Virus record (IMG/VR): IMGVR_UViG_3300042515_001753
Coordinates: 62,001-126,000 of that record
Strand: one strand, 5' to 3'
Length of the DNA: 64,000 bases
Both the position numbers and the translations under genes were made by a program. Position 1 is the stretch's first letter. Every line of letters begins with the position of its first letter. Positions 2,028-15,728 of this stretch are shown here, in pieces. Below the pieces are notes generated by a model. That model was not told the origin of the DNA. It was given only the letters and a program-made list of their open reading frames with translations, and made no database searches.

Positions 2028-2055
2028 ATTATAGCATAAAAAAGGGAGGTGTCAA
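2028..2055 (-). promoter_or_regulatory. sigma70-type promoter TTGACA-N16-TATAAT with extended -10 (TGn)
   Basis: Minus strand reads TTGACA CCTCCCTTTTTTATGC TATAAT. Confidence 0.8.
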
Positions 2056-2078
2056 CTGGTTTTTGCCAGTTACCTCCC
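2038..2078 (-). terminator. intrinsic terminator after hsp20
   Basis: GGGAGGT-AACTGG-CAAAAA-CCAGTT-GAC-ACCTCCC followed by T6. Confidence 0.75.
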
Positions 2079-2102
2079 TGCGGCAACGATATTCAATTAT
2101 AT

Positions 2103-4361: not shown

Positions 4362-4503
4362 AAGTTTTAGGATGAAAATTACAATACTCATTAAATACAA
4401 TCTTACACTCCTTATGAGTAAGATTACAATGCTCTGCTGCCTTTGGAAGATTCCACTTAGCAGTAAAAAGCATTTCCATCGCTTCTCTTGTTTCAGGTCT
4501 CAT
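4348..4503 (-). CDS. small hypothetical protein (51 aa), possible helix-turn-helix
   Basis: Not in the ORF track. MRPETREAMEMLFTAKWNLPKAAEHCNLTHKECKIVFNEYCNFHPKTYEVS; fills the gp44-dam gap exactly, with an ATGA overlap. Confidence 0.7.
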   Translation of the reverse strand: MRPETREAMEMLFTAKWNLPKAAEHCNLTHKECKIVFNEYCNFHPKTYEVS

Positions 4504-5444
4504 AGGAACTCACATTCACACATAATTTCAGTTAGACAGGCAAGTAGATTTATCTCTTGGTCGGCAACAAATGCTGATTGATATTGATACTTTGCCACAA
4601 CCAATACTGCGGCAGCAATAGAAGGTCCATCAAGAACATCATACAAGGAGTCATAGATACGACGCAAAATTATATTGATGTCATTATCCAAATTGGAAAC
4701 AACCCACTTACGAACCTCGGCAAAGTTCTTTTCTTTCAGATACCTGTTTAGTTCATTTACGGAGATGTCCGAAAAAGATGCCAAAATACCCGAATCAATT
4801 TCACCACTAACAGAATATCTTTGACATTCGTTAGTGACCCTTCTGAAGTCTGGAAAGTGCTTGTTTATCAGTTCTGCAAGGACCTTCGGATCATATCTGA
4901 CGCCCTCCCTATCCAAGATGTTTTGTAGACGCTTGAAGAAGGATCCTGCCAACTTGGTCTTTTCTTTTCCTTTGATTGTGAAGTCAATGACGGCACATCT
5001 GGAATGGAGGGGTTCGATGATTTTGTTCTTGTAGTTGCAGGTAAAGATGAATCGGCAATTACCAGCAAATTCCTCAATAAACGCCCGTAAGAGGAGTTGA
5101 ACATCGTTGCTCGTGTTATCTGCCTCATCAATAATGATGACTTTGTGTTTAGCATCTGACGAAAGTGAGACGGTCGAAGCGAAGTTTTTCGCATTGTTTC
5201 GGACAGTATCAAGGAATCTACCCTCGTCGGATCCGTTGATGACATAACAATCTACTCCTAATTCATTACATAATGCCTTTGCCACGGTGGTTTTTCCTAC
5301 ACCAGCAGGACCACACAGAAGCAAGTTAGGCAGTTCGCCACTATTTAGAAAGTCTTGAAAGGTCTTTTTAGTTTGTTCAGGAAGAATACAATCTTCAATT
5401 GTTTTTGGGCGGTGTCGTTCGCACCATAAGAAATCATTTGTCAT
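4500..5444 (-). CDS. gp44: clamp loader large subunit (AAA+)
   Basis: LWCERHRPKTIEDCILP, GPAGVGKTT, IIIDEAD, IIEPLHSRC. Confidence 0.97.
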   Translation of the reverse strand: MTNDFLWCERHRPKTIEDCILPEQTKKTFQDFLNSGELPNLLLCGPAGVGKTTVAKALCNELGVDCYVINGSDEGRFLDTVRNNAKNFASTVSLSSDAKHKVIIIDEADNTSNDVQLLLRAFIEEFAGNCRFIFTCNYKNKIIEPLHSRCAVIDFTIKGKEKTKLAGSFFKRLQNILDREGVRYDPKVLAELINKHFPDFRRVTNECQRYSVSGEIDSGILASFSDISVNELNRYLKEKNFAEVRKWVVSNLDNDINIILRRIYDSLYDVLDGPSIAAAVLVVAKYQYQSAFVADQEINLLACLTEIMCECEFL

Positions 5445-5589
5445 AATTTATATAAAAAGAATCTTTTTCAAGAAAATGTATTTTATCGTGAATTGCGTGT
5501 AACGCATTCTGTTTTATTTCCCAGTGGTCTTCATCGTCATCAACGAGAATATTTACTATTGTTGCCACCTCTACTCTAATTGCTTTCAT
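5434..5589 (-). CDS. small acidic hypothetical protein (51 aa)
   Basis: Not in the ORF track. MKAIRVEVATIVNILVDDDEDHWEIKQNALHAIHDKIHFLEKDSFYINYDK; overlaps both neighbours. Confidence 0.6.
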   Translation of the reverse strand: MKAIRVEVATIVNILVDDDEDHWEIKQNALHAIHDKIHFLEKDSFYINYDK

Positions 5590-6095
5590 ACCCATTCTGG
5601 ACGCCTTTGTGGCATACGGAGATAATTATTGCTAACCCAAGGCTTGGATGCAATATACATCTTGTAAGCAGTAAAAGTGTCAATGCTTGTGTCAAATTTA
5701 TATTCATCGGGCATAGCACGAACAAATGGAGTTACATTAGTCAATTTACCCTTTGGAAATAAGTAATAAGCATCCAGAAGAGTATTGTAGCACGAATGAG
5801 TCTTTCCGTAACGAACAGAATACTCATCACAGAGATTCATACCCCACTTGATTAACCAGTAAGCATTATCAATTGATTCTGCTGCCCACCGAGTACAGGG
5901 GTGATTGCGGAAAGCACCTTTTTCAGTTGTATATGGAGTTCCATCTTTTTTAGGAAGAGTTCCATAATTATGATACCACTTGGATGCCACAATAGAAAGC
6001 ATTTGACACGCCTCTAAGGGCATCTTCGTTATATGTTTGTCAGGGAGACAAATTGCGGACTCTGCCGGAAATTCAGAAGTAACAAAAATATTCAT
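5586..6095 (-). CDS. pyrimidine-dimer DNA glycosylase / endonuclease V (DenV)-related family protein
   Basis: MNIFVT...DKHITKMPLEACQMLS, HPCTRWA, EYSVRYGKTH, F.RAMPDEYK: typical of this phage family. Confidence 0.65.
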   Translation of the reverse strand: MNIFVTSEFPAESAICLPDKHITKMPLEACQMLSIVASKWYHNYGTLPKKDGTPYTTEKGAFRNHPCTRWAAESIDNAYWLIKWGMNLCDEYSVRYGKTHSCYNTLLDAYYLFPKGKLTNVTPFVRAMPDEYKFDTSIDTFTAYKMYIASKPWVSNNYLRMPQRRPEWV

Positions 6096-6499
6096 CAGAA
6101 ACAATATTTCTTAAGTTGATGAAGAACTTCCTCTGGTTTATCTTCTAGATAATATGCCTCTGTTTCGTAAATGGCATATGAACCAGTTGCCTTTACTGAC
6201 CTCATAACATCATTTAGTTTATACTGGTTCAGAGAAGCAGATATTCCCAACTTACCACCCTTACACGCCTGTGCTACATGAACTGCTTCGTGATATACAG
6301 TTTCATTTACATAATGCTTTACTGGACTAATTGTGTTTTTGATATTATCTAAACAAATTATAAAGTCTGGGGACTTTAGAAGTCCAAATAACTGCTTGTC
6401 TCTACAGACTGGAGCATTTTCTCTAACATTATAATTCTTTAGCATAATTTTGCTAATTATTTCCTGACCAGCAGGAGTCAAATAGAGTAGAAATTCCAT
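6095..6499 (-). CDS. small zincin-like metallopeptidase (HEXXH)
   Basis: Likely start MEFLLYLT; TVYHEAVHVAQAC followed by E.EAY third-ligand motif. Confidence 0.65.
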   Translation of the reverse strand: MEFLLYLTPAGQEIISKIMLKNYNVRENAPVCRDKQLFGLLKSPDFIICLDNIKNTISPVKHYVNETVYHEAVHVAQACKGGKLGISASLNQYKLNDVMRSVKATGSYAIYETEAYYLEDKPEEVLHQLKKYCF

Positions 6500-6515
6500 A
6501 ATAAAGAAGAAAGAA

Positions 6516-7205
6516 TCAATTAAAAGTGCTGTCTGGTTCCAGAGCAATCCAGTAAGAAAGATTGTGCTTCGTGTTGGTAAATTGTGACAGAAGTTTCCTT
6601 GACACAACTACATTATAAGCACCAGAAACAATCTTACTGATGTTCTCAACCTTGAAGTTGAAAGTAAATTGTTCGTCAGTTTCACCCACAACGATGGAGT
6701 ATTCGTTAGAAGTATCATTCTTCTTGTCACGAACTACCAGACGAATCACACCAGCATCACCGATTGCCGAAATATCGGGCAACTGATAAACTCCTGCTGC
6801 TTTCACCAGTTTCTCCAGAGCACCAGTTTCAAGTTGGAAGCACACATCCTCAGAAGGAAGTTTGATTTCTTTTTCTGGGGGAGAAATGATTACGTTAGGG
6901 TCGGCATAGAAGTACTTGACCCTACGCTTACCTTCACGAATGGTAATATAAGAATTCTCAGTAAAATCAAGGTCTGGGTCCTGATGAAGACTCAAACCAT
7001 TCAGGAACTGATTCAGGTCATAAACCGCAAATTCACGGGGGAACTCTTCGGTAATTTCTGCCTCTGCCAGAATGTTCTTGGCAATAGAAATTGTACGAAG
7101 TTTATTACCCTGCTTGACGAGAATAGACTGATTGATGCCAGCAAAGTTCTTGAGAAGAGTCAGGGTATTGTCAGAGAGTTTCATAGTGTTTTCTTTCAGT
7201 TTCAT
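6516..7205 (-). CDS. gp45: DNA polymerase sliding clamp
   Basis: MKLSDNTLTLLKNFAGINQSILVKQGNKLRTIS...LSYWIALEPDS; alternative start at 7184. Confidence 0.96.
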   Translation of the reverse strand: MKLKENTMKLSDNTLTLLKNFAGINQSILVKQGNKLRTISIAKNILAEAEITEEFPREFAVYDLNQFLNGLSLHQDPDLDFTENSYITIREGKRRVKYFYADPNVIISPPEKEIKLPSEDVCFQLETGALEKLVKAAGVYQLPDISAIGDAGVIRLVVRDKKNDTSNEYSIVVGETDEQFTFNFKVENISKIVSGAYNVVVSRKLLSQFTNTKHNLSYWIALEPDSTFN

Positions 7206-7210
7206 AATAA

Positions 7211-7654
7211 TCAGCGATTGAATTCAGTAAGTCCATTATCTTTACGAGTATAATGCCCATCAAAGTGGAGAAGTAGCATAGCATAGTGAATGACTTTCAT
7301 CAAGTCACGCTTATTGCGACCATCCTTGTCTCCATAACGAGAACCATATTTGAGGATGTTTGCCTGACAGAAACCTGCTGCTAGCTTCTTTGCTGCCATC
7401 AGGTCAATAGTCTGAATATCGGCATAACCATCACTATCACCACAATAATGCCCGTGATAGGTAGTGGTCACATAATCCTCAACATCTTTAAGGATTTTAT
7501 CTTCGTTGTATTTCCAAAGATGATTTGTTTTATCAGTCATAGTAACAGGAGTTTTTGTAACATTAAGTATGCCAGTCTCACCATTCATAGTGAGATTGAA
7601 TTTATTGATAAGATTTTGTTCGTCTTCAGGTCCAAACATAAGGGGAGAAGTCAT
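7211..7654 (-). CDS. DUF3310-like protein (T7 gp1.7 nucleotide kinase-related)
   Basis: HY...IQTIDL...GFCQANILKYGSRYGDKDG.NKRDLMKVIHY fits the DUF3310 pattern HY..IECID..GF..GNAIKY..R.GKK...EDL.KA..Y. Confidence 0.6.
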   Translation of the reverse strand: MTSPLMFGPEDEQNLINKFNLTMNGETGILNVTKTPVTMTDKTNHLWKYNEDKILKDVEDYVTTTYHGHYCGDSDGYADIQTIDLMAAKKLAAGFCQANILKYGSRYGDKDGRNKRDLMKVIHYAMLLLHFDGHYTRKDNGLTEFNR

Positions 7655-7675
7655 AATTAACCTCCCCCAATTATA

Positions 7676-8821
7676 TCAGAAAGGAAGGTCAATGTCAATC
7701 TCCCTACCACCCCCAATAGTCAGTTCAAGAGTTTCAGAAGGCATTACAAAATCAGCATCAATCTTATCATACAGTTCCAAGAAGGCAGTTTTGGTTTCAT
7801 CATCAAAACGATTGATACAAACCTGAATTGCCTTTGCCTTATCACCAAAGATGCTGTAGGCACGGACGATATGAACCAGTCGGCGGGTGGAGATGATTTC
7901 CTCAATACCACCATCATAGAAGGTCTTACGGATTACATCACCCCAATCTGCCAATCGCTTGCAGAAATCATCAATCTCGGTAAGACCCAGAGATGCTGCG
8001 ATGCCCTGAAGGATGCGAATCTCAGTAGCAGCAGCAGGATATGGTTGCTCAAAGGTCACGCAGAACCGCTCTAGGAACGCTTCGTTGAGCACGTTGGTGC
8101 CGATGAACCTACCGTCCTCAGAACCCTTTCCTTTGGTGTTTGCGGTGGCAATCACGTTGAATCCGGGAGCGGGTTTGACGAACCGTCCGATTTTTTTCAG
8201 GAAGACACCCTTACCTTCAAGAATAGATTGAAGGCACAGGATTTTATTGGAAGCAAGGTCAACCTCATCCAAAAGCAATACGGCACCACGCTCAAGTGCC
8301 TCAATCACGGGTCCGTTGTGCCAAGCAGTTTCACCATTCACAAGTCGGAAACCACCAATCAAATCATCCTCATCAGTCTCAATCGTAATATTCACACGAA
8401 TCAGTTCTCGCTTCAGTTGAGCACACGCTTGCTCCACACTGAACGTTTTACCATTACCCGAAAGACCCGTAATGAATGTAGGATAAAAAAGACGAGACTG
8501 AAGAATTTTTTTAACGTCAGCAAAACTACCAAACTTGACGAAGGTATCATCTTTATCGGGAATAAGGTTTTGGTGATGTTCGGGAAGAACTGCAACATTT
8601 TGGAAAGAACGCTCAATCTCTTCTACACGCTCTTGAGTCACTTCAAGGTTCCATTTGCCACGAGAAGTTTTGTATTGTGAGAGTTTATTACTTACGGTTT
8701 GGTAGTTGAGCGAACGAGAGGCACAGAAACCCCTGAGGTCGCCAGAAGTAATTTCAGTACCATAGAGTTCTTTGATTGCTTCAATTAGTTGGGCGTCATT
8801 CACGGCAGTTTTGCGGGACAT
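7676..8821 (-). CDS. cobS: CobS-like / MoxR-family AAA+ ATPase
   Basis: Walker A GLSGNGKT, Walker B LLLDEVD, ATANTKGKG, NEAFLERF, ISTRRL. Confidence 0.9.
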   Translation of the reverse strand: MSRKTAVNDAQLIEAIKELYGTEITSGDLRGFCASRSLNYQTVSNKLSQYKTSRGKWNLEVTQERVEEIERSFQNVAVLPEHHQNLIPDKDDTFVKFGSFADVKKILQSRLFYPTFITGLSGNGKTFSVEQACAQLKRELIRVNITIETDEDDLIGGFRLVNGETAWHNGPVIEALERGAVLLLDEVDLASNKILCLQSILEGKGVFLKKIGRFVKPAPGFNVIATANTKGKGSEDGRFIGTNVLNEAFLERFCVTFEQPYPAAATEIRILQGIAASLGLTEIDDFCKRLADWGDVIRKTFYDGGIEEIISTRRLVHIVRAYSIFGDKAKAIQVCINRFDDETKTAFLELYDKIDADFVMPSETLELTIGGGREIDIDLPF

Positions 8822-8854
8822 AATGTAGTTAGGTGGTTTTGTTTAACTGAAGTA

Positions 8855-8912
8855 ATTATACAACAAAAAAGAGGGTCGTGGGACCCCCTATGGACGGTTT
8901 TAAGATTGGACC
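8855..8912 (-). promoter_or_regulatory. early promoter cassette: dyad motif, terminator hairpin and -10 TATAAT upstream of cobS
   Basis: Plus strand TGGACGGTT-TTAA-GATTGGACC; TATAAT at 8855-8860; no consensus -35. Confidence 0.65.
8865..8888 (-). terminator. intrinsic terminator
   Basis: GGGGGTC-CCAC-GACCCTC followed by T6. Confidence 0.8.
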
Positions 8913-9094
8913 TGCTGGTTTCGCAGTTTATCTATGTACTCAAGACTCGCACAGTGACCCCTATAACCAGGATAATATTCATTCACCATAGCAGGAATAC
9001 CCATAGCAGTAATCGCACTGTCACACTTCACCCAAACTTCTTTGGTTTCGTGATTTACAACGTGTTCTAATCTCAATTTGTTAGTCTTCTTCAT
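8900..9094 (-). CDS. hypothetical protein (about 64 aa)
   Basis: Likely start MKKTNKLRLEHVVNHETKEVWVKCDS; overlaps the end of the upstream gene. Confidence 0.6.
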   Translation of the reverse strand: MKKTNKLRLEHVVNHETKEVWVKCDSAITAMGIPAMVNEYYPGYRGHCASLEYIDKLRNQQVQS

Positions 9095-9641
9095 AAGTAA
9101 ATGTTTTGTTTTTGACTTTTGTATCAAACTCACCAGTTCTTCCTGGTTTCATTTTTCCAACTCCAACATTCTTACCTTTACCAGGCCAAGATGTTTTGGA
9201 TGTTCCTTTCAGTGTAGCAGATCCTCCTGGTTTGCGTTGAATCAGAACGGAGTCCTGATCATCCTTTGATGACCCTGATTTTACATTCTTTTTGTGCTTA
9301 AGTCCAGCCTCTGTGCCCAGTTTCTCAACTGTCCTCTTAAAGATTTTCTTACCCATTTTACCAGAAGAAACTACGTGAGATTTTTCACCCACTTTTTTCT
9401 CATCTGGAGTTCCTGGGTTTTCAGTATATCTTCCGGATACTTTTGTTGGACCTGGAAGACCGGCACCTCTAATTCTTCTTTCGGTTCTTGAAGACCTTGC
9501 TTTGTTTTCTGCTTTTGATTTGTCACCTCGCTGCCCAGAAAGAATTGCCATTCCACCCTTTTCAGACTTACTCATTACGCGAGTAAGAGAAGTCTCTTGG
9601 ATAGAATAGCATTCTACCATAAATTCCTGAAAGGTCTTCAT
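9081..9641 (-). CDS. putative internal head protein with T4-type capsid targeting sequence; basic, Gly/Lys-rich
   Basis: Start MKTFQEFMVE (T4 CTS is MKTYQEFIAE); late promoter TAAATA at 9662-9667. Confidence 0.7.
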   Translation of the reverse strand: MKTFQEFMVECYSIQETSLTRVMSKSEKGGMAILSGQRGDKSKAENKARSSRTERRIRGAGLPGPTKVSGRYTENPGTPDEKKVGEKSHVVSSGKMGKKIFKRTVEKLGTEAGLKHKKNVKSGSSKDDQDSVLIQRKPGGSATLKGTSKTSWPGKGKNVGVGKMKPGRTGEFDTKVKNKTFTYEED

Positions 9642-9661
9642 TTTTATAAGCACTTTTTGAG

Positions 9662-9667
9662 TATTTA
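9662..9667 (-). promoter_or_regulatory. T4-type late promoter core TAAATA
   Basis: CTAAATAC about 20 nt upstream of the ATG at 9641. Confidence 0.6.
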
Positions 9668-9668
9668 G

Positions 9669-11840
9669 TTAAGCAACCAATTCAATAAACTCACCAAGAA
9701 TCTTCTTATTCATTTTTTTAGAACTCAAAGACTTGACAAAAGCAGATTTAATTTGTGCCTTTGAGGCATCTTCGGCAACCTTGAACTCACTATCACTATT
9801 GAGAGCAGAGGAAGAAATACCAAAGTAAGTATGATAACCAGAAGTAGTAAGGGCAAAACTGCGCTCTTTCTTCCAGCGTGTCATTACTTTGTGATATTCA
9901 TCTCCAATATATCCGGTATAATTCCGAATAAAATGCCCGGCATCACGACTATCAAGAATACGCATTCCAATAAAATTCACGCTGGGAAACTTGTCACGGA
10001 GATTTCTGAGAAGAAGGTCCGTAAAAGATGTATTGTTATTCCAAGTATTTTCAGAAAACTTATAAACATTTCCAGTCTTACGGTCACGAAGGTAGGAATT
10101 ATCTTGAATGTAATGAGTTCCTAGAAAACTTTCCTTTTCCCAGTGTCGTTTGATTTCCCGATAATACTTCAGAGGAGCTGCTTCACCATCAGTCAGAATT
10201 ACACACTGGACTTTCTGAAGTTTATGTTCTTTCTGAAAATGTGGAAGAATTTGATGTAAGGCAACAAGTGACTCATTCAGTGGAGTTCCGGAAAGAGTTA
10301 GTTTATGGGGAGCAGAATACTTACAATTACCATAATTGGAGCGGTCATACTGTTTGGCAACCCGATAGATATTCTTGAGTTGAGTATCAAGAACCGAACT
10401 TTTTACCTTGCTGGTAAATAGGTTCAGAAGACCAAATGTATAATCAACCACGAGTTCATTCTCTTTACGAACGGTATGTTCTTTAGGAGTGATTACTTTA
10501 CCATCGGCATCATATGAAGACCTATAGTTCCAATCATTTGTAAAGGCATAAACCTCAAAAGGAATATTAACCTTATTGCAGAACCAAATAAGATTATAAA
10601 GTTGCTTGACAGTATCCATAAGAACGCTACTCATAGACCCAGACCAGTCCAGAATAAAAACCAGACCGTGATTTTTACCGGTGGCAAATGTGGTTACTTT
10701 CTTGAACAAATCCTCCTGATACTTATAGGTATGAAGTTTCGTACAGTCCAGAACACCAGTCTTAGAAACTGATGCACGGGCATAGGAGTCTGCTGCCTTA
10801 CGACACTCAAACTCTTTCACTAGATAATTGACTTCCTTTTGTGCCGAACGCTTGAAATCTACATAATCGGCATCTACTGCGGTAAAGATTCCACTATCTT
10901 CGTGAATATAGATTTGATTATTCCAAGTTTCTTTACAATAATCGTGAATAATTTGATTAGAAATAATCGCAGAATCTAGATTCAATTTAGGAACTTCAAT
11001 ATAATTAGTTTCTTGAATGTTGTTATTCACTAGTTCCTTAAGGTTTTCCTCAAGAGAACTCATAGTCTTCACCTCCGGTTCAGAGTGTTCCCCACCAGTT
11101 TGTTGAGTATTTTGGTCCTCAAATTTTTCACCTTGAGTTTGTTGTTCAGACCCAGAGGTTTGTTGCTTATCGCCATCACCTTCACCATCCTCTTCGGGAG
11201 AAAGTTCTTGCTGTTCTTCAGATTGGTCTCCCGCACCAGAACCAGAAGACTTTTCGTGATTATCAAGACTGGGGAGTTTGGTAGGTTCTTCTTGCTTTTG
11301 CTTACAGTAATCATAAAGAACCTTGGCAGCATCCAGAGTTTCATCAAAGGTTTCTGCCTTACCAATCATATCAACAATTTCTTGCTCCTTATTGGTAAAT
11401 TCAAGAGTCAAGAAATTACCAACCTTGAAGTAAAGATTTGCACGGTCGGCAAGATTATGTGTTGAAAGGTCATCATCACCAATCTGAAAGAAATCTTCTT
11501 CCTGAAGTTCCCGATAGGCACCATAGAAGGTCTTTGCCAATCCGGCATAACGGCGTTTGATGAGTTTCTCTACACGAGCATCCTCACATACATTCACAAA
11601 CTGCTGAGGAACCTGAACTTGCTCACTCCAGTCCTCATCAGGCGTATAAAGTGAATGGGATACCTCGTGGGCAACCAACATATCATAGACACAATTACTT
11701 GCCTTCTGCCACATAGGAAGCGTCAGAACCCGTGTATGAACATTAAAGCAGGCAGTCTCAACCTTCTTGTGTTCCACAATCAGGTCTTCCGTTGCCAGAA
11801 GACGGGCGAGCATACCTTTTACTTCAAAATTTACGGTCAT
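9669..11840 (-). CDS. CobT-like vWA-domain protein with N-terminal HEXXH metallopeptidase
   Basis: AHEVSHSLYT (HEXXH), NVCEDARVE, acidic linker, MIDAS LDWSGSMS, LSGTPLNE and ILTDGE. Confidence 0.85.
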   Translation of the reverse strand: MTVNFEVKGMLARLLATEDLIVEHKKVETACFNVHTRVLTLPMWQKASNCVYDMLVAHEVSHSLYTPDEDWSEQVQVPQQFVNVCEDARVEKLIKRRYAGLAKTFYGAYRELQEEDFFQIGDDDLSTHNLADRANLYFKVGNFLTLEFTNKEQEIVDMIGKAETFDETLDAAKVLYDYCKQKQEEPTKLPSLDNHEKSSGSGAGDQSEEQQELSPEEDGEGDGDKQQTSGSEQQTQGEKFEDQNTQQTGGEHSEPEVKTMSSLEENLKELVNNNIQETNYIEVPKLNLDSAIISNQIIHDYCKETWNNQIYIHEDSGIFTAVDADYVDFKRSAQKEVNYLVKEFECRKAADSYARASVSKTGVLDCTKLHTYKYQEDLFKKVTTFATGKNHGLVFILDWSGSMSSVLMDTVKQLYNLIWFCNKVNIPFEVYAFTNDWNYRSSYDADGKVITPKEHTVRKENELVVDYTFGLLNLFTSKVKSSVLDTQLKNIYRVAKQYDRSNYGNCKYSAPHKLTLSGTPLNESLVALHQILPHFQKEHKLQKVQCVILTDGEAAPLKYYREIKRHWEKESFLGTHYIQDNSYLRDRKTGNVYKFSENTWNNNTSFTDLLLRNLRDKFPSVNFIGMRILDSRDAGHFIRNYTGYIGDEYHKVMTRWKKERSFALTTSGYHTYFGISSSALNSDSEFKVAEDASKAQIKSAFVKSLSSKKMNKKILGEFIELVA

Positions 11841-11865
11841 CGGAGTTCGTTTGTCTTATGAACCT

Positions 11866-11922
11866 ATTATACAAAAAAAGAGGGTCTTGAGGACCCTCTG
11901 TGTGCCAGTTTTGGAAGTGGTT
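11866..11922 (-). promoter_or_regulatory. early promoter cassette: dyad motif, terminator hairpin and -10 TATAAT upstream of the vWA gene
   Basis: Plus strand TGTGCCAGTT-TTGG-AAGTGG; TATAAT at 11866-11871; same spacing as the cobS cassette. Confidence 0.7.
11873..11898 (-). terminator. intrinsic terminator
   Basis: GAGGGTC-CTCAA-GACCCTC followed by T7. Confidence 0.85.
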
Positions 11923-11927
11923 TTTTA

Positions 11928-12482
11928 TTAGTTATGCTTTGGAGATTTGCCAATCTCATCAAATCTTTTTCTTTCAGTCTCTCTTGTAATGGCACTTACA
12001 ATTTTAGCAGACCTTTTCTTCTTTCCTTCATCACCAGTAGCAATTCCAGAGCGAGCAAGTTCCCCCGCCTTACGATACATTTTTGTTTGGGGAAGTTCTT
12101 TCTTCTCTTCGTCCAAAATACTCTGCTTCCACTCTTCACTCATATTTGCCATAATGACCAGAGCACTCTCATTAGTGTCGGCATAACCTTCGGAAACTAG
12201 GTGCTCAAGAATGGTGTCAAAAAGGTCTGTTTCCACTTCTTCAGGACGATATCCACCACTTGTTGCTGTTGGAGTTCCTCTTCCTTTACCAGCAGGAGCA
12301 ACAATCTTAGAAACTACTTTTCCAACGGGATTTGTTTTCATAAAATTAGCACCTTTCTCAAGAGCACCTTTTACAGCATCTTGAACATTCTCATCAAGTT
12401 CTTCTACTTCTTCTACAACTTCTTGAGGTTGATGAACCTGTAAATAAGCTTCATAAAGTTCTCTAACTTCTTGTTCTCTCAT
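11928..12482 (-). CDS. late hypothetical protein, probable head-packaged protein
   Basis: TATAAATA at 12502-12509 upstream; ELYEAYLQV N-terminus and DLFDTILEHLVSEGYADT..SALVIMANMSEEW module, both recurrent in cyanophage late proteins. Confidence 0.7.
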   Translation of the reverse strand: MREQEVRELYEAYLQVHQPQEVVEEVEELDENVQDAVKGALEKGANFMKTNPVGKVVSKIVAPAGKGRGTPTATSGGYRPEEVETDLFDTILEHLVSEGYADTNESALVIMANMSEEWKQSILDEEKKELPQTKMYRKAGELARSGIATGDEGKKKRSAKIVSAITRETERKRFDEIGKSPKHN

Positions 12483-12501
12483 TTTTCCAAAACTTTCTAA
12501 T

Positions 12502-12509
12502 TATTTATA
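12502..12509 (-). promoter_or_regulatory. late promoter TATAAATA
   Basis: Exact T4 late consensus. Confidence 0.75.
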
Positions 12510-12639
12510 AAAAAAAACACTCCGAAGAGTGCTTTTTCTTAAAGGCTTTGAGTCGTGCCTTTGCCTGTCGGAGTGCCTGCGGTTTGAGTCTCCGCTTCTG
12601 CTCCTTGCGTGAATGGTGTTGCCAGTTTGGAAGTTTCAT
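12505..12639 (-). CDS. small basic hypothetical peptide (44 aa)
   Basis: Not in the ORF track. MKLPNWQHHSRKEQKRRLKPQALRQAKARLKAFKKKHSSECFFL; own upstream promoter and a terminator inside its 3' end. Confidence 0.7.
   Translation of the reverse strand: MKLPNWQHHSRKEQKRRLKPQALRQAKARLKAFKKKHSSECFFL
12509..12531 (-). terminator. intrinsic terminator with UUCG loop
   Basis: CACTC-TTCG-GAGTG followed by T9. Confidence 0.85.
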
Positions 12640-12660
12640 TTTCCCTTTGCTTATGAGAAC

Positions 12661-12712
12661 ACAATACTATCTATAATCACGGAAGTCAAGAGGTCCAGTT
12701 GGGAAAGTGTCC
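12661..12712 (-). promoter_or_regulatory. sigma70-type promoter TTGACT-N17-TATTGT with upstream dyad motif
   Basis: -35 at 12684-12689, -10 at 12661-12666; plus strand GGTCCAGTT-GGGA-AAGTGTCC at 12692-12712. Confidence 0.6.
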
Positions 12713-14427
12713 TATACCTCACTTTTATATGAGAATCCATTTTTTTTCTCAAACTTAATCACACTATTAAATTTGTCCTCAAGTCCAGTCTTATGTGAAA
12801 TTACAAATACATTAGTATCCTTAATCACATAACGAATAATCTTAAGGAACTCATCAGTACCAAATCCATCAAGAGAACCATCAAACACCTCATCAAACAA
12901 AAGGATATTACAATTTGCAGAGTTCTTAACTCTTGCAATTTCTCTCCAAGCAAATACTAGAGCAAGATTAATTTTTGCCTTCTCACCCTCACTAAAAGAA
13001 CTATAAGAAAAGTTCTCGTGAATGGGTGACTTGATGCTCTCATTAAATTCTTCATCAAGATGGAAATTAATATAAAAATCCATCATCTGTAAGTAACGAT
13101 TCACCTGCTGATTTATGAACGGGAGATACTTTTTAATAATCTTCGTTTTTACACCATCATCCTTGAGTAAGGAATAGGCAAAATCATAATGAACGATTTC
13201 TTCTTTTTTATCCGAAAGGTCATCAAATGTTTTTTGAAGATTGTCTCTAAACTCTTCTAACTTCTCATTTTCAGTATTTCTATTTTTAAGTTGTTCGGTA
13301 ATAGTTTGAACTTCAGATTCAAGGTTTCGGATTTGTCTCTGACTGAGTGAAATCCGAGTATTGTTTTGAGAAATCTCATGGTTGAGTTTCGTAATCTCCT
13401 TTGATAGTGCTAGAAATTGACGCTCTCGTTCTTGTTCAAACTTCATAGTCTCCTCAAGTTCCTGAAAACCTTTCTGGAGTTCCTTTGCTTTATTTTGAGC
13501 GTCTGTAATTCTATTTAACCGAAACTCTTCCTCAATAGTTTGAGTACAAGTAGGGCATACCGTATTTTCACTAAAGAACTTGTGCTCTTTAGTAATCGTA
13601 GATACTTTCTGAGAGATTTTACCCTTAAGATTATTAAGTTTTCCTAACTTCTCTGCGGCACCAATAACTTCTTCTTGCTCTTTCGTATATTTGAAAATGT
13701 CTTCTTCGGTCTTGGCATTCTCGGTCATATAAGTACCAACTTCAGCATCTAAATCGGAAATTTTCCGTTTATTGGCATTTATATTGGCATTACCACGATT
13801 CTCAAGTTCCTCAATAAAACTCTTCTGCATTTCAACCTTGTCCTTAAGGTTTTGCTTCTTCAACTCAAGAGATTTTATTTCGTCCTTTTTAGTACGAATC
13901 TTTTCTTTGATAATAGTGTTCATCGTAGAGAATATCCGAATATCCAATAAGTCCTCAATTACCTCACGACGATTGGCAGTCGTAAGTTGCATAAAAGGCA
14001 CAAAGGTACTGGAACCCAGAATCACGATTTGGGTGAAAGATTTATAATTGACCTTTAGAATATTTTCTTCTAGTAATTTCTGATTAATACGGTCATCAGA
14101 TTCCTTATGAAGTTGTTTTCCATTTACTTCAATATCAAAGACATTTGGTTTGATTCCACGACGAACCAAATAATCACGACTATTGACAGAAAACTCAATC
14201 TCAACTAAACAATCCTTTTCGTTTGTTTGATTGATTAATTGAGGTTTGTTGATTTTGCGAAATGGTTTATTGAATAATACAAAAGTAAGAGCATCAAGTA
14301 CAGTTGATTTTCCTGCACCATTCGTTCCAATAATTAAGTTTGTATGATTCTTTTGGAAATCAATTTCTGTAAAATGCTGTCCGGTAGAAAGAAAGTTTTT
14401 CCATCGAATTTTTTTAAAGGTTATCAT
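12712..14427 (-). CDS. gp46: recombination endonuclease ATPase subunit (SbcC/Rad50-like)
   Basis: GTNGAGKST, coiled coils, zinc hook CPTC, FSEGEK signature, LLFDEVFDGSLD. Confidence 0.97.
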   Translation of the reverse strand: MITFKKIRWKNFLSTGQHFTEIDFQKNHTNLIIGTNGAGKSTVLDALTFVLFNKPFRKINKPQLINQTNEKDCLVEIEFSVNSRDYLVRRGIKPNVFDIEVNGKQLHKESDDRINQKLLEENILKVNYKSFTQIVILGSSTFVPFMQLTTANRREVIEDLLDIRIFSTMNTIIKEKIRTKKDEIKSLELKKQNLKDKVEMQKSFIEELENRGNANINANKRKISDLDAEVGTYMTENAKTEEDIFKYTKEQEEVIGAAEKLGKLNNLKGKISQKVSTITKEHKFFSENTVCPTCTQTIEEEFRLNRITDAQNKAKELQKGFQELEETMKFEQERERQFLALSKEITKLNHEISQNNTRISLSQRQIRNLESEVQTITEQLKNRNTENEKLEEFRDNLQKTFDDLSDKKEEIVHYDFAYSLLKDDGVKTKIIKKYLPFINQQVNRYLQMMDFYINFHLDEEFNESIKSPIHENFSYSSFSEGEKAKINLALVFAWREIARVKNSANCNILLFDEVFDGSLDGFGTDEFLKIIRYVIKDTNVFVISHKTGLEDKFNSVIKFEKKNGFSYKSEV

Positions 14428-14687: not shown

Positions 14688-15728
14688 TTACTCCACTTCG
14701 CAAGCTTGTTTATAGAGGTCTTGGAATATACCTTTGATAGTACTCTTATCAAAGTCACATTCGGATTCATCAATATAACGATTCAGAATTGAAATTGTAT
14801 TCTCTTCTTCGTCAATTACAAAGTTTTCATTTTCCTGAATCTCAAAGTTTTCAACAATCTTCAGGTCTTGAATGCCAATCTTATAGAGTTTGTCAATAAA
14901 CTTCTCAAAATCTTTTTGCTTAGATTTCTTACGGACGATTACTTTGACAATCTTATTAGAATACTCAGAGGCATCAAAAGTCTGATGTGGAGTATCTTCA
15001 TAATAAATGTTATAGAATAATTTATAAGGATTATTGATTGGAGTATGTTCTAGAGTTTCGGTATCAAAGATATGAAATCCCCGAGTGTCATTTACATCCG
15101 TCCAATACATTTCATAAGGATTACCGAGATAGAACACAGTTCCATTATCAGAACGAGTGTGGTAATGACCAGAAAATACCTTTGTGAAGTTTGAAAAAAG
15201 ATTTGCTTCCAGTCCATGCTCCTCCATTACAAGATGTTTATTGACCCGAAACCCTTTGAGTTCAAGGTGCCCCATCGCAATCTTTGCCTTTGACTTCCGA
15301 ATAACTTTTAGAGTTTCATCATAGTTCTCACTACAAATCCAAGGAATAAAAGTCATATCAATTCCACCAACCTTCGTATTCGTTGGAGAACTATATGTCT
15401 TTATGTTTGGATAATCTTTGAGAAGTAGTTCTGGAGCATTAATTTCAGTAGAATTACGAAGAAAAATATCGTGATTACCCACAATCATATGGACTTGGTA
15501 CTTTCTAAGAGGTTCTAGCACTACTTTTTTAGTCCAATCAAGACCCCAGAAATCAATACTTTTACGATTATCAAAGGCATCGCCCATATGAATGACCGTC
15601 TCTACCCCGTGTTCTTCTAGAGCAGGGAAGAAAACATTATCGTAAAATAATTGAAAATAGTCGTGAAGATTTCTTGAAGCTTTTCTGGCGCTCCAGTGGG
15701 TGTCCGTTAAAATTGCAATACGGGTCAT
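14688..15728 (-). CDS. gp47: recombination endonuclease nuclease subunit (SbcD/Mre11-like)
   Basis: Metallophosphoesterase motifs ILTDTH, HMGDAFDNR, IVGNHD, MGHLE, FSGHYH. Confidence 0.97.
   Translation of the reverse strand: MTRIAILTDTHWSARKASRNLHDYFQLFYDNVFFPALEEHGVETVIHMGDAFDNRKSIDFWGLDWTKKVVLEPLRKYQVHMIVGNHDIFLRNSTEINAPELLLKDYPNIKTYSSPTNTKVGGIDMTFIPWICSENYDETLKVIRKSKAKIAMGHLELKGFRVNKHLVMEEHGLEANLFSNFTKVFSGHYHTRSDNGTVFYLGNPYEMYWTDVNDTRGFHIFDTETLEHTPINNPYKLFYNIYYEDTPHQTFDASEYSNKIVKVIVRKKSKQKDFEKFIDKLYKIGIQDLKIVENFEIQENENFVIDEEENTISILNRYIDESECDFDKSTIKGIFQDLYKQACEVE

What the first reader, a model, noticed from the sequence alone, without database searches (positions are those of the whole stretch)
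7676..11840. Co-regulated MoxR-type AAA+ (CobS-like) and vWA-metallopeptidase pair: likely a chaperone-protease machine
Seen: an AAA+ ATPase with an extra ~60-aa N-terminal helical domain, and a 723-aa protein combining HEXXH and an intact MIDAS vWA. Both sit behind near-identical promoter cassettes and appear more GC-rich than the structural genes. Established: MoxR ATPases work with vWA adaptors to remodel client proteins (e.g. CbbQ/CbbO on Rubisco). Inference: an early host-takeover remodelling or degradation system rather than cobalamin synthesis, since no CobN is in the window. The client is unknown.
Basis: partly seen in the sequence, partly recalled or inferred. Interest (0 to 1): 0.6.

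Follow-up and report, generated by a model that had tools for sequence, protein, structure and literature searches.

The report
Cyanophage CobS/CobT-like ATPase–peptidase pair
This is the well-known but functionally untested "cobS + peptidase" gene pair of T4-like cyanophages: an early-expressed motor ATPase and its adaptor, built like the CobS–CobT motor of cobalt chelatase, except that the adaptor keeps an intact zinc-protease motif that three true CobT sequences lack.

Summary
Window 7676-8821(-) encodes a MoxR-class AAA+ ATPase whose closest single-domain solved relative is CobS. Window 9669-11840(-) encodes a 723-aa protein with an N-terminal HEXXH domain, an acidic linker and a MIDAS vWA domain. 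Both follow the same motif + hairpin + T-run + TATAAT cassette. They are not adjacent: a SAM-lyase-like ORF lies between them.

The window is a freshwater T4-like cyanophage, and the pair sits in the conserved slot between gp46/47 and gp45/44. It is a core cyanophage pair, linked in nearly all 80 related loci.

The 723-aa protein has the full CobT architecture. A complex model docks its first helix onto the ATPase lid as in the solved CobS-CobT complex (score 0.84, best control 0.01).

HExxH+E and MIDAS are invariant in 200 homologues. Three true CobTs lack HExxH. In P-HM2 both genes are early while their neighbours are middle.

Best reading: an early, ATP-driven CobST-type remodelling machine with a probably active metallopeptidase and an unknown client. 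Host-CobN hijack is the main rival.

Both readings are already published (Iyer 2021; Liu 2021). This is a new member of a known kind whose function is untested.

The parts
7676..8821 (-). CobS-like MoxR-class AAA+ ATPase (P0001, 381 aa). It has a cyanophage-specific N-terminal extension (aa 1 to about 95), an AAA core and a helical lid.
   Evidence: phrog_249 E 4e-132. AAA_5 66 bits. Solved CobS 9ujv 79 bits, NorQ 51, CbbQ 41. TIGR01650 scores only 72 bits against a cut-off of 558.
8444..8467 (-). Walker A (aa 119-126, GLSGNGKT).
   Evidence: Invariant G119, G122, G124 and K125 in A4.
8264..8269 (-). Walker B D185-E186.
   Evidence: Invariant in A4.
7748..7936 (-). Lid (small) domain helices, aa 296-358. 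This is the predicted docking surface for the adaptor's N-domain.
   Evidence: Interface residues 296-306 and 342-358 in the complex model. The same surface is used in the CobS_S-CobT_N crystal structure.
9669..11840 (-). CobT-like adaptor (P0002, 723 aa), annotated 'peptidase' in cyanophage genomes.
   Evidence: phrog_459 E 2e-262. tblastn finds it in 464 phage records. Model m65431657c81f.
11286..11840 (-). N-terminal zincin-like domain, aa 1-185: helix 1, a three-stranded sheet, then helices.
   Evidence: Model pLDDT 87.8. Best fold matches are the ArdC protease domain (Z 7.0), jannalysin (6.0), ZMPSTE24 (5.9) and selecase (5.8). The topology matches that described for CobT_N.
11655..11669 (-). 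HEVSH (aa 58-62). The putative third ligand E86 is at 11583-11585.
   Evidence: 200/200 conserved. Replaced in true CobT.
11070..11285 (-). Acidic disordered linker, aa 186-257 (19 D+E, 4 K+R).
   Evidence: pLDDT about 25-29. Column conservation 0.42.
10674..10772 (-). Candidate 'shaft/finger', aa 357-389, immediately before strand 1 of the vWA domain.
   Evidence: Disordered in the monomer model. It is the most conserved segment (0.86). It is positionally equivalent to the CobT shaft that threads the CobS pore.
9801..10673 (-). vWA domain with MIDAS (DWSGS at 10635-10649, T519, D551).
   Evidence: VIA matches: MDN1 MIDAS Z 15.2, NorD VWA Z 13.7, Rea1 MIDAS Z 13.3, against generic vWA at about 10-11. 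Foldseek top hit NorD.
11866..11911 (-). Cassette upstream of the adaptor gene: AAACTGGCAC, a hairpin, T7, TATAAT. It ends 25 nt before the ATG.
8855..8900 (-). Cassette upstream of the ATPase gene: AAACCGTCCA, a hairpin, T6, TATAAT. It ends 33 nt before the ATG.
9081..9653 (-). Intervening ORF P0003 (probable start ATG 9641). It is SAM-lyase-like. It occupies the variable slot between the pair and is not shown to belong to the machine.
   Evidence: 10/10 relatives match PF23780, best E 9.8e-20. The window copy scores 27.5 bits against a cut-off of 28.

Best explanation
The two genes encode a CobS/CobT-type motor-adaptor complex that the phage makes early in infection from its own promoters.

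Proposed mechanism, by homology with CobST and NorQD:
- The ATPase forms a hexameric MoxR-class ring.
- The adaptor anchors its N-terminal domain on the ATPase lid.
- The adaptor's conserved pre-vWA 'shaft' enters the ring pore.
- The MIDAS vWA domain is presented to a client protein.

Unlike the three true CobTs examined here, the adaptor's M48-like N-domain keeps a complete HExxH...E zinc site. The most likely activity is therefore ATP-driven remodelling coupled to cleavage of a protein client. That client is not, or not only, the host cobalt chelatase subunit CobN.

Shown: the domain architecture, residue conservation, gene linkage, the shared cassette and early expression of orthologues.
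Inferred: the complex (model only), ring threading, proteolysis, and the existence of a non-CobN client.
For: Complex:
- The model scores 0.84, with the best of 3 controls at 0.01. That mark was reached by 51 of 78 solved complexes and 2 of 108 mismatched pairs. The runs share at least 92% of contacts and the partner pLDDT is at least 87.
- The interface is adaptor helix 1 plus residues 53/57 and 98-104 against ATPase lid residues 296-306 and 342-358. This is the geometry reported for CobS_S-CobT_N.

Architecture:
- The order is N-domain, roughly 70-aa acidic linker, two long helices, shaft, then vWA. This equals the description of CobT.
- The vWA domain is closest to the ring-docking MIDAS domains of MDN1/Rea1 and NorD.

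Homology chain:
- The A1 profile against the Klebsiella phage-plasmid vWA protein gives hhalign probability 95%, E 2e-8.
- That protein matches Pfam CobT at 58.7 bits and CobT_C at 179.7 bits.

Catalytic signature:
- H58, E59, H62, E86, D87 and the MIDAS residues are 200/200 invariant.
- All five mobile-element versions have HExxH. Three CobTs above the TIGR01651 cut-off do not.
- 11 of the 12 best structural matches to the N-domain are zincin peptidases.

Linkage: the ATPase gene lies 84-3572 nt downstream on the same strand in nearly all of the 80 IMG/VR loci that have room for it. The same slot is used in P-HM2, S-SRM01, Syn30, S-RSM4 and an Ochrobactrum phage.

Regulation:
- The identical cassette type stands upstream of both genes, with a fixed 31-33 nt motif-to-TATAAT distance across relatives.
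- The other two copies in the record head runs of small ORFs.
- In P-HM2 both genes are Early(A) and the neighbours Mid(B). cobS is used as the early marker in P-SSM2.

Against a CobN-only role:
- Relatives of the adaptor sit on 1108 plasmid records, including Klebsiella, Escherichia, Yersinia and Acinetobacter.
- The E. coli control genome does not match the CobN model.
- The phage record has its own NrdA/NrdB class I reductase.
Against: - No proteolysis, zinc binding or client has been shown for any member.
- The structural matches of the N-domain are modest (Z 7.0 or less; Foldseek E at least 0.27).
- HExxH could serve a structural or metal-sensing role. True CobT keeps the equivalents of H62 and E86.
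- The closest characterised homologues are a cobalt chelatase motor, and cyanobacteria have CobN without CobST.
- The direct profile comparison with true CobT is weak (hhalign probability 7%), so homology rests on a bridge sequence and on architecture.
- The complex score is a model's confidence and may reflect likeness to solved MoxR/vWA complexes.
- The plasmid relatives form a different ATPase clade from the T4-like phage clade, so their host range may not transfer to this phage.
Confidence: 0.55

Rival explanations
1. Viral CobST: the pair replaces the missing CobS/CobT of the cyanobacterial host. It drives host CobN to insert cobalt, raising (pseudo)cobalamin during infection (Liu et al. 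2021).
For: - CobS is the best single-domain solved relative of the ATPase (79 bits against NorQ 51).
- The adaptor has the full CobT architecture and the predicted CobS-CobT docking.
- The control Synechococcus elongatus matches the CobN model but not the CobT model.
- The hypothesis is published.
- Early expression would suit a metabolic boost.
Against: - The equivalog models fail: TIGR01650 72 bits against 558, and no TIGR01651 or Pfam CobT hit.
- The invariant HExxH has no known role in chelation and is absent from three true CobTs.
- Related pairs occur in plasmids of enterobacteria, and the E. coli control lacks CobN.
- Three Pelagibacter phage records also carry the adaptor. SAR11 is generally held not to make cobalamin; this is my own knowledge and was not tested here.
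- The phage has its own class I ribonucleotide reductase.
- No CobN is found in the 146-kb record, which is 68% complete.
Confidence: 0.25
2. Virion-assembly chaperone: a MoxR-vWA pair that folds and proteolytically processes structural proteins. This was proposed for group 2.2 jumbo phages, by analogy with ATV p618/p892 (Iyer et al. 2021).
For: This is a published proposal for the same architecture. MoxR-vWA pairs are general assembly chaperones (established knowledge).
Against: - The orthologues are early genes, not late ones.
- The pair lies in the replication/recombination module between gp46/47 and gp45/44.
- In other mobile elements it sits next to dnaE, uracil-DNA glycosylase or an exonuclease, and not next to structural genes.
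Confidence: 0.07
3. The HExxH site is a relic. The pair is a non-proteolytic MoxR/vWA remodeller, for example one that inserts a metal or matures a phage or host replication or photosynthesis protein.
For: All characterised MoxR/vWA systems (CobST, NorQD, CbbQO) remodel their clients or insert metals without proteolysis. The N-domain's demonstrated role in CobT is docking to CobS and CobN.
Against: A relic should drift. Instead H58, E59, H62 and E86 are invariant in 200 sequences down to 53% identity. They are also kept in relatives at only about 22% identity.
Confidence: 0.13

Closest known systems
CobS/CobT motor of aerobic cobaltochelatase CobNST
   Same: - MoxR-class AAA+ ring plus an adaptor built as M48-like N-domain, acidic linker, shaft, then MIDAS vWA.
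- The same predicted N-domain-to-lid docking.
   Different: - The equivalog models are not met.
- The adaptor keeps HExxH, which three true CobTs lack.
- No CobN in the phage record.
- The ATPase has an extra N-terminal extension.
MoxR-vWA-metallopeptidase pair of T4-like jumbo phages (Iyer et al. 2021, PMC7824862) and the 'cobS + peptidase' core genes of cyanomyoviruses (T4-GC150/146)
   Same: It is the same gene pair and the same genomic slot.
   Different: Nothing structural differs. This is a freshwater, uncultured member, 58% identical to S-SRM01 in the adaptor.
NorQ/NorD and CbbQ/CbbO
   Same: MoxR ring with a vWA partner whose finger enters the pore. NorD is among the top structural matches.
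   Different: No peptidase-like N-domain is reported in these partners. The clients are metalloenzymes encoded in the same operon. ATPase similarity is lower than to CobS.
Midasin/Rea1 AAA ring with MIDAS domain
   Same: The ATPase's best sequence hits are midasin AAA modules, and the best fold hit of the vWA domain is the MDN1 MIDAS domain.
   Different: Midasin is a single giant eukaryotic protein that acts in ribosome biogenesis.
CobS/CobT-like pairs of SSU5-type phage-plasmids and other mobile elements (Klebsiella p2 CP037443, Methylobacterium pAMS5a, a Chelativorans element)
   Same: An HExxH + vWA adaptor lies upstream of a CobS-like ATPase, next to replication genes.
   Different: They form a separate ATPase clade. 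Their adaptors still match Pfam CobT and CobT_C, whereas the cyanophage adaptor does not.
ArdC anti-restriction protein (R388), metalloprotease domain
   Same: It is the best structural match of the N-domain (Z 7.0, 119 residues, 17% identity). It is a mobile-element protein that acts early after entry.
   Different: The match is weak. ArdC has an ssDNA-binding domain and no vWA or ATPase partner.

Membership tests
MoxR-class AAA+ ATPase | AAA_5-type core with Walker A/B, sensor 1, arginine finger and sensor 2, plus a CbbQ_C-type lid | tested here: met
   AAA_5 66 bits. CbbQ_C 19.2 bits, against a cut-off of 20.6. The catalytic residues are invariant in A4.
CobS (cobaltochelatase subunit, TIGR01650 equivalog) | Score above the curated cut-off (558.55 bits) | tested here: not met
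   72.1 bits. About 93-102 bits by BLASTP to two neighbouring-gene CobS sequences, which fall in a separate clade.
CobT (TIGR01651 / Pfam PF06213 + PF11775) | Match to the curated models | tested here: not met
   No NCBIfam hit. No TIGR01651 match in the record. Pfam CobT reaches E 0.89 in 1 of 11 family members. hhalign against true CobT gives probability 7%.
CobT (architecture) | Helix 1 + three-stranded sheet + helical N-domain, long acidic linker, two helices, shaft, vWA with MIDAS | tested here: met
   Models compared with the published description. The sequence bridge runs through the Klebsiella protein.
CobST-type complex | Adaptor N-domain binds the ATPase small domain | tested here: met
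   In silico only: score 0.84, best control 0.01.
CobNST cobaltochelatase | A CobN catalytic subunit to act on | tested here: not met
   None in the 146-kb record, which is 68% complete. The host is unknown, so host CobN is not testable. A control cyanobacterium has a CobN match.
vWA/MIDAS domain | DxSxS...T...D motif on a vWA fold | tested here: met
   D398, S400, S402, T519 and D551 are invariant. Fold Z 13-15.
Zincin (gluzincin/M48-like) metallopeptidase | HExxH on the active-site helix plus a downstream Glu ligand | tested here: met
   HEVSH at 58-62 and E86, 200/200 conserved.
Zincin (gluzincin/M48-like) metallopeptidase | Zincin fold | tested here: inconclusive
   The top matches are consistently zincins, but Z is 7.0 or less and Foldseek E is at least 0.27.
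Zincin (gluzincin/M48-like) metallopeptidase | Zinc binding and peptide-bond hydrolysis | not testable with these tools
   This needs biochemistry.

The most novel reading that the evidence does not exclude
The pair is an ATP-driven, MIDAS-targeted metalloprotease. Many mobile elements (T4-like phages, phage-plasmids and other plasmid-borne elements) would use it right after entry to destroy or remodel a host protein, such as a defence factor or a replication or transcription control protein. The cobaltochelatase motor CobST would then be a domesticated, protease-dead descendant of this machine.
Probability: 0.3. Interest if true: 0.8.

Novelty: new member of a known kind. Interest (0 to 1): 0.5.

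Why it matters
cobS is one of the signature core genes of marine and freshwater cyanomyoviruses. For twenty years it has been filed as a cobalamin 'auxiliary metabolic gene' without a test.

If the pair is instead a protease-armed remodelling machine aimed at a host protein, a widely counted 'metabolic' viral gene would need re-labelling. A widespread early-acting function of mobile elements would also gain a handle.

The comparison made here gives concrete mutants and a clear either/or experiment. The comparison rests on three points: an intact HExxH in the mobile-element forms against a degenerate site in three true CobTs, the predicted docking surface, and the conserved shaft.

Tried and rejected
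- Sequence searches of the PDB with P0002, the A1 profile, the A3 N-domain profile and the Ochrobactrum-phage CobT found no CobT or peptidase.
- Direct hhalign of the cyanophage family against true CobT was weak (probability 7%). Homology had to be shown through a bridge sequence.
- The search for homologous proteins with the Ochrobactrum-phage CobT gave only 14 hits, none cellular.
- The CCAGTT/AACTGG palindrome scan was only about 2-fold over shuffles, with both strands counted, so I did not use it. The shorter motif AAACTGKCMC alone is at chance level in the window. Only its fixed spacing to TATAAT is informative.
- The N-terminal extension of the ATPase gave no significant family (HTH_40 E 0.028) and no Atlas lead.
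- Rfam found nothing in 7000-12800.
- Metatranscriptome contigs of 90-99% relatives cover both genes in 4 runs of 2 studies. Contigs cannot show transcript starts, and DNA carry-over is possible, so no conclusion was drawn.
- The Atlas fold search returned only the protein's own family.

Full report
**What is there.** The window is part of a 146-kb uncultured T4-like cyanomyovirus record. Its nearest isolate is the freshwater Synechococcus phage S-SRM01, at 58% amino-acid identity for the large protein. The DNA itself occurs in lake-water metagenomes.

On the minus strand the gene order is:
- gp47 (SbcD-like), 14688-15728
- gp46 (SbcC-like), 12712-14427
- a 184-aa ORF
- the 723-aa protein P0002, 9669-11840
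- a 190-aa ORF, P0003, 9081-9653
- the 381-aa ATPase P0001, 7676-8821
- a 147-aa ORF
- gp45 clamp, 6516-7205
- gp44 clamp loader, 4500-5444

The same slot holds 'peptidase' + 'cobS' in P-HM2 (T4-GC146/150), S-SRM01, Syn30 and S-RSM4. In an Ochrobactrum T4-like phage it holds 'CobT' + 'cobalt chelatase subunit'.

P0001 has an AAA_5 core with intact Walker A/B, sensor and arginine-finger residues. It also has a cyanophage-specific N-terminal extension whose fold I could not test.

P0002 has HEVSH at residues 58-62 and E86 one helix later. It has a 72-residue acidic linker and a DxSxS...T...D MIDAS motif. All twelve of these catalytic and metal-site residues are invariant in 200 homologues spanning 53-94% identity.

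Both genes are preceded by the same composite element. It consists of a short motif (AAMSYGDC), a GC-rich hairpin with nearly the same stem, a T-run and TATAAT. These are the only two such elements in the 64 kb. The whole 146-kb record holds four, all on the coding strand, against none for the reversed control pattern.

Both genes are more GC-rich than the window average: 0.452 and 0.394 against 0.351.

**The pair is a conserved unit.** tblastn finds P0002 relatives in 464 phage records, nearly all cyanophages. The exceptions are three Pelagibacter phages and single Stenotrophomonas, Pseudoalteromonas, Ralstonia and Ochrobactrum phages. In 80 IMG/VR loci the ATPase gene follows on the same strand at 84-3572 nt wherever there is room, with very few exceptions. 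The space between the two genes is variable.

**What the large protein is.** No Pfam or NCBIfam model matches it. The AlphaFold model (mean pLDDT 72) has this layout:
- helix 1, a three-stranded sheet and six helices (aa 1-185)
- a disordered acidic linker
- a strand and two long helices
- a disordered but highly conserved segment (aa 357-389)
- a vWA domain
- a C-terminal helix

This is the layout just described for Brucella and Rhodobacter CobT. That layout has an M48C-like N-domain that binds the CobS small domain, a linker of about 90 residues, a 'shaft' that threads the CobS pore, and a MIDAS vWA domain.

The vWA domain matches the ring-docking MIDAS domains best: MDN1 Z 15.2, NorD Z 13.7, Rea1 Z 13.3. 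Generic vWA domains score about 10-11.

Folded alone (pLDDT 87.8), the N-domain gives modest but consistent zincin matches:
- ArdC protease domain, Z 7.0
- jannalysin, Z 6.0
- ZMPSTE24, Z 5.9
- selecase, abylysin, BlaR1, BepA and PprI, lower

**Link to CobT, and the key difference.** Direct profile comparison with true CobT is weak. A bridge sequence exists, however. The vWA protein of a Klebsiella SSU5-type phage-plasmid aligns to the cyanophage N-domain with hhalign probability 95%. That same protein matches Pfam CobT (58.7 bits) and CobT_C (179.7 bits).

I fetched three CobTs that exceed the TIGR01651 cut-off, from Chelativorans, Novosphingobium and Paracoccus. In the joint alignment all five mobile-element proteins have HExxH. 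The true CobTs have (D/N)(E/D/P)xxH at that place. They keep only the second histidine and the downstream glutamate. The 'peptidase' label is therefore not simply an annotation error. The phage protein is a CobT-family adaptor whose ancestral zincin site is intact.

**The complex.** A two-chain model of P0001 with P0002 residues 1-185 scored 0.84, with the best of three controls at 0.01. That mark was reached by 51 of 78 solved complexes and 2 of 108 mismatched pairs. The runs agree in at least 92% of contacts and the partner pLDDT is at least 87. The contacts are adaptor helix 1, residues 53/57 and residues 98-104, against ATPase lid residues 296-306 and 342-358. These correspond to the CobS_S-CobT_N interface in the crystal structure. 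This supports binding but does not prove it.

**Regulation and timing.** The cassette architecture is conserved upstream of both genes in relatives. The motif ends 31-33 nt before TATAAT in both gene sets. Its background frequency is 0.035 per 120 nt. The 42 nt before the -10 box fold far more stably than random segments. The two other copies in this record head runs of small ORFs typical of T4-like early regions.

In P-HM2 the orthologues PHM2_135 and PHM2_136 are both 'Early (A)' in the light and 'Mid (B)' in the dark. The flanking genes 134 and 137 are 'Mid (B)' in both conditions. cobS serves as the early marker gene for P-SSM2. The hairpin and T-run probably also terminate upstream transcripts. 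That point, and the use of TATAAT as a promoter, are inferences.

The published hypothesis is that viral CobST uses host CobN. A control cyanobacterium matches the CobN model and not the CobT model.

Other evidence does lean away from a CobN-only role:
- The zincin site is strictly conserved.
- Both equivalog models fail.
- The record carries its own class I ribonucleotide reductase.
- Related HExxH-vWA/ATPase pairs occur on 1108 plasmid records, mostly about 110-kb non-mobilisable plasmids of Klebsiella, Escherichia, Yersinia and Acinetobacter. The E. coli control genome has no CobN match.

In these elements, and in alphaproteobacterial ones, the pair sits beside dnaE, uracil-DNA glycosylase, an exonuclease or a sigma-like gene. 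This echoes its place in the cyanophage replication module. A caveat applies: the plasmid ATPases form a separate clade from the T4-like phage ATPases.

**Verdict.** Iyer et al. 2021 described the MoxR-vWA-metallopeptidase pair in T4-like jumbo phages. Liu et al. 2021 argued that it is cobST.

This analysis adds:
- the explicit contrast between intact and degenerate HExxH
- the CobST-like docking model
- the conserved shaft
- the shared early cassette
- the distribution across mobile elements

I rate an early CobST-type remodeller with an active peptidase at 0.55, host-CobN hijack at 0.25, a non-proteolytic remodeller at 0.13 and virion assembly at 0.07.

Noticed in passing
window 9081-9653 (-), probable start ATG 9641: The ORF between the two genes is lysine/glycine-rich. 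It belongs to a family in which 10/10 aligned relatives match Pfam S-AdoMet_lyase (best E 9.8e-20). The window copy scores 27.5 bits against a cut-off of 28. It is a probable SAM lyase of the anti-restriction type, sitting in a variable slot.
   Followed up: partly
window 7643-7698 (-): A perfect TTGACA-17-TATAAT promoter with TG overlaps the stop codon of the ATPase gene. It is followed by a hairpin (7668..7643) that contains the GGAGG and the ATG (7654) of the next ORF (7211-7654). This may be a translational control element.
   Followed up: no
G000:C1:3727-3773 and 8078-8124 (outside the window; loci L174, L175): Two further copies of the motif-hairpin-TATAAT cassette lie here. Each heads a run of small ORFs (about 50-126 aa), as in T4-like early regions. 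Together with the pair's two cassettes they look like a small regulon of four cassettes in 146 kb.
   Followed up: partly
window 2028-2095 (-): A variant cassette occurs here. A CCAGTT/AACTGG palindrome forms the loop of a longer hairpin, followed by T6 and TATAAT, upstream of an ORF that starts at 2004.
   Followed up: no
80 IMG/VR loci L006-L085: The gap between the adaptor and ATPase genes ranges from 84 to 3572 nt. It holds different small genes in different phages, which makes it an insertion hotspot inside a conserved pair.
   Followed up: partly
L136 (Chelativorans), L134 (Novosphingobium), L143 (Paracoccus): Genomes that have a true cobS-cobT also carry a second pair: an HExxH-bearing vWA protein plus an AAA ATPase. 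In Chelativorans it sits next to a sigma-70-region-2 gene and a PHP/DnaE polymerase gene, so it is probably a prophage or plasmid module.
   Followed up: partly
L166 (Halomonas socia chromosome) 4767-9018: A CobS-like ATPase with a CobS_N match lies beside a 471-aa protein that has only the CobT_C vWA part and no N-domain. A DDE transposase gene separates the two.
   Followed up: no
L086 (pCAR1) 4986-9124: On the IncP-7 plasmid pCAR1 the related ATPase is followed by a DUF3150 protein and a NorD-like vWA protein. This is a three-gene variant lying near a 3'-5' exonuclease gene.
   Followed up: no
G000:C1:98912-101635 (loci L178, L179): The phage record encodes adjacent large and small subunits of a class I ribonucleotide reductase.
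   Followed up: no
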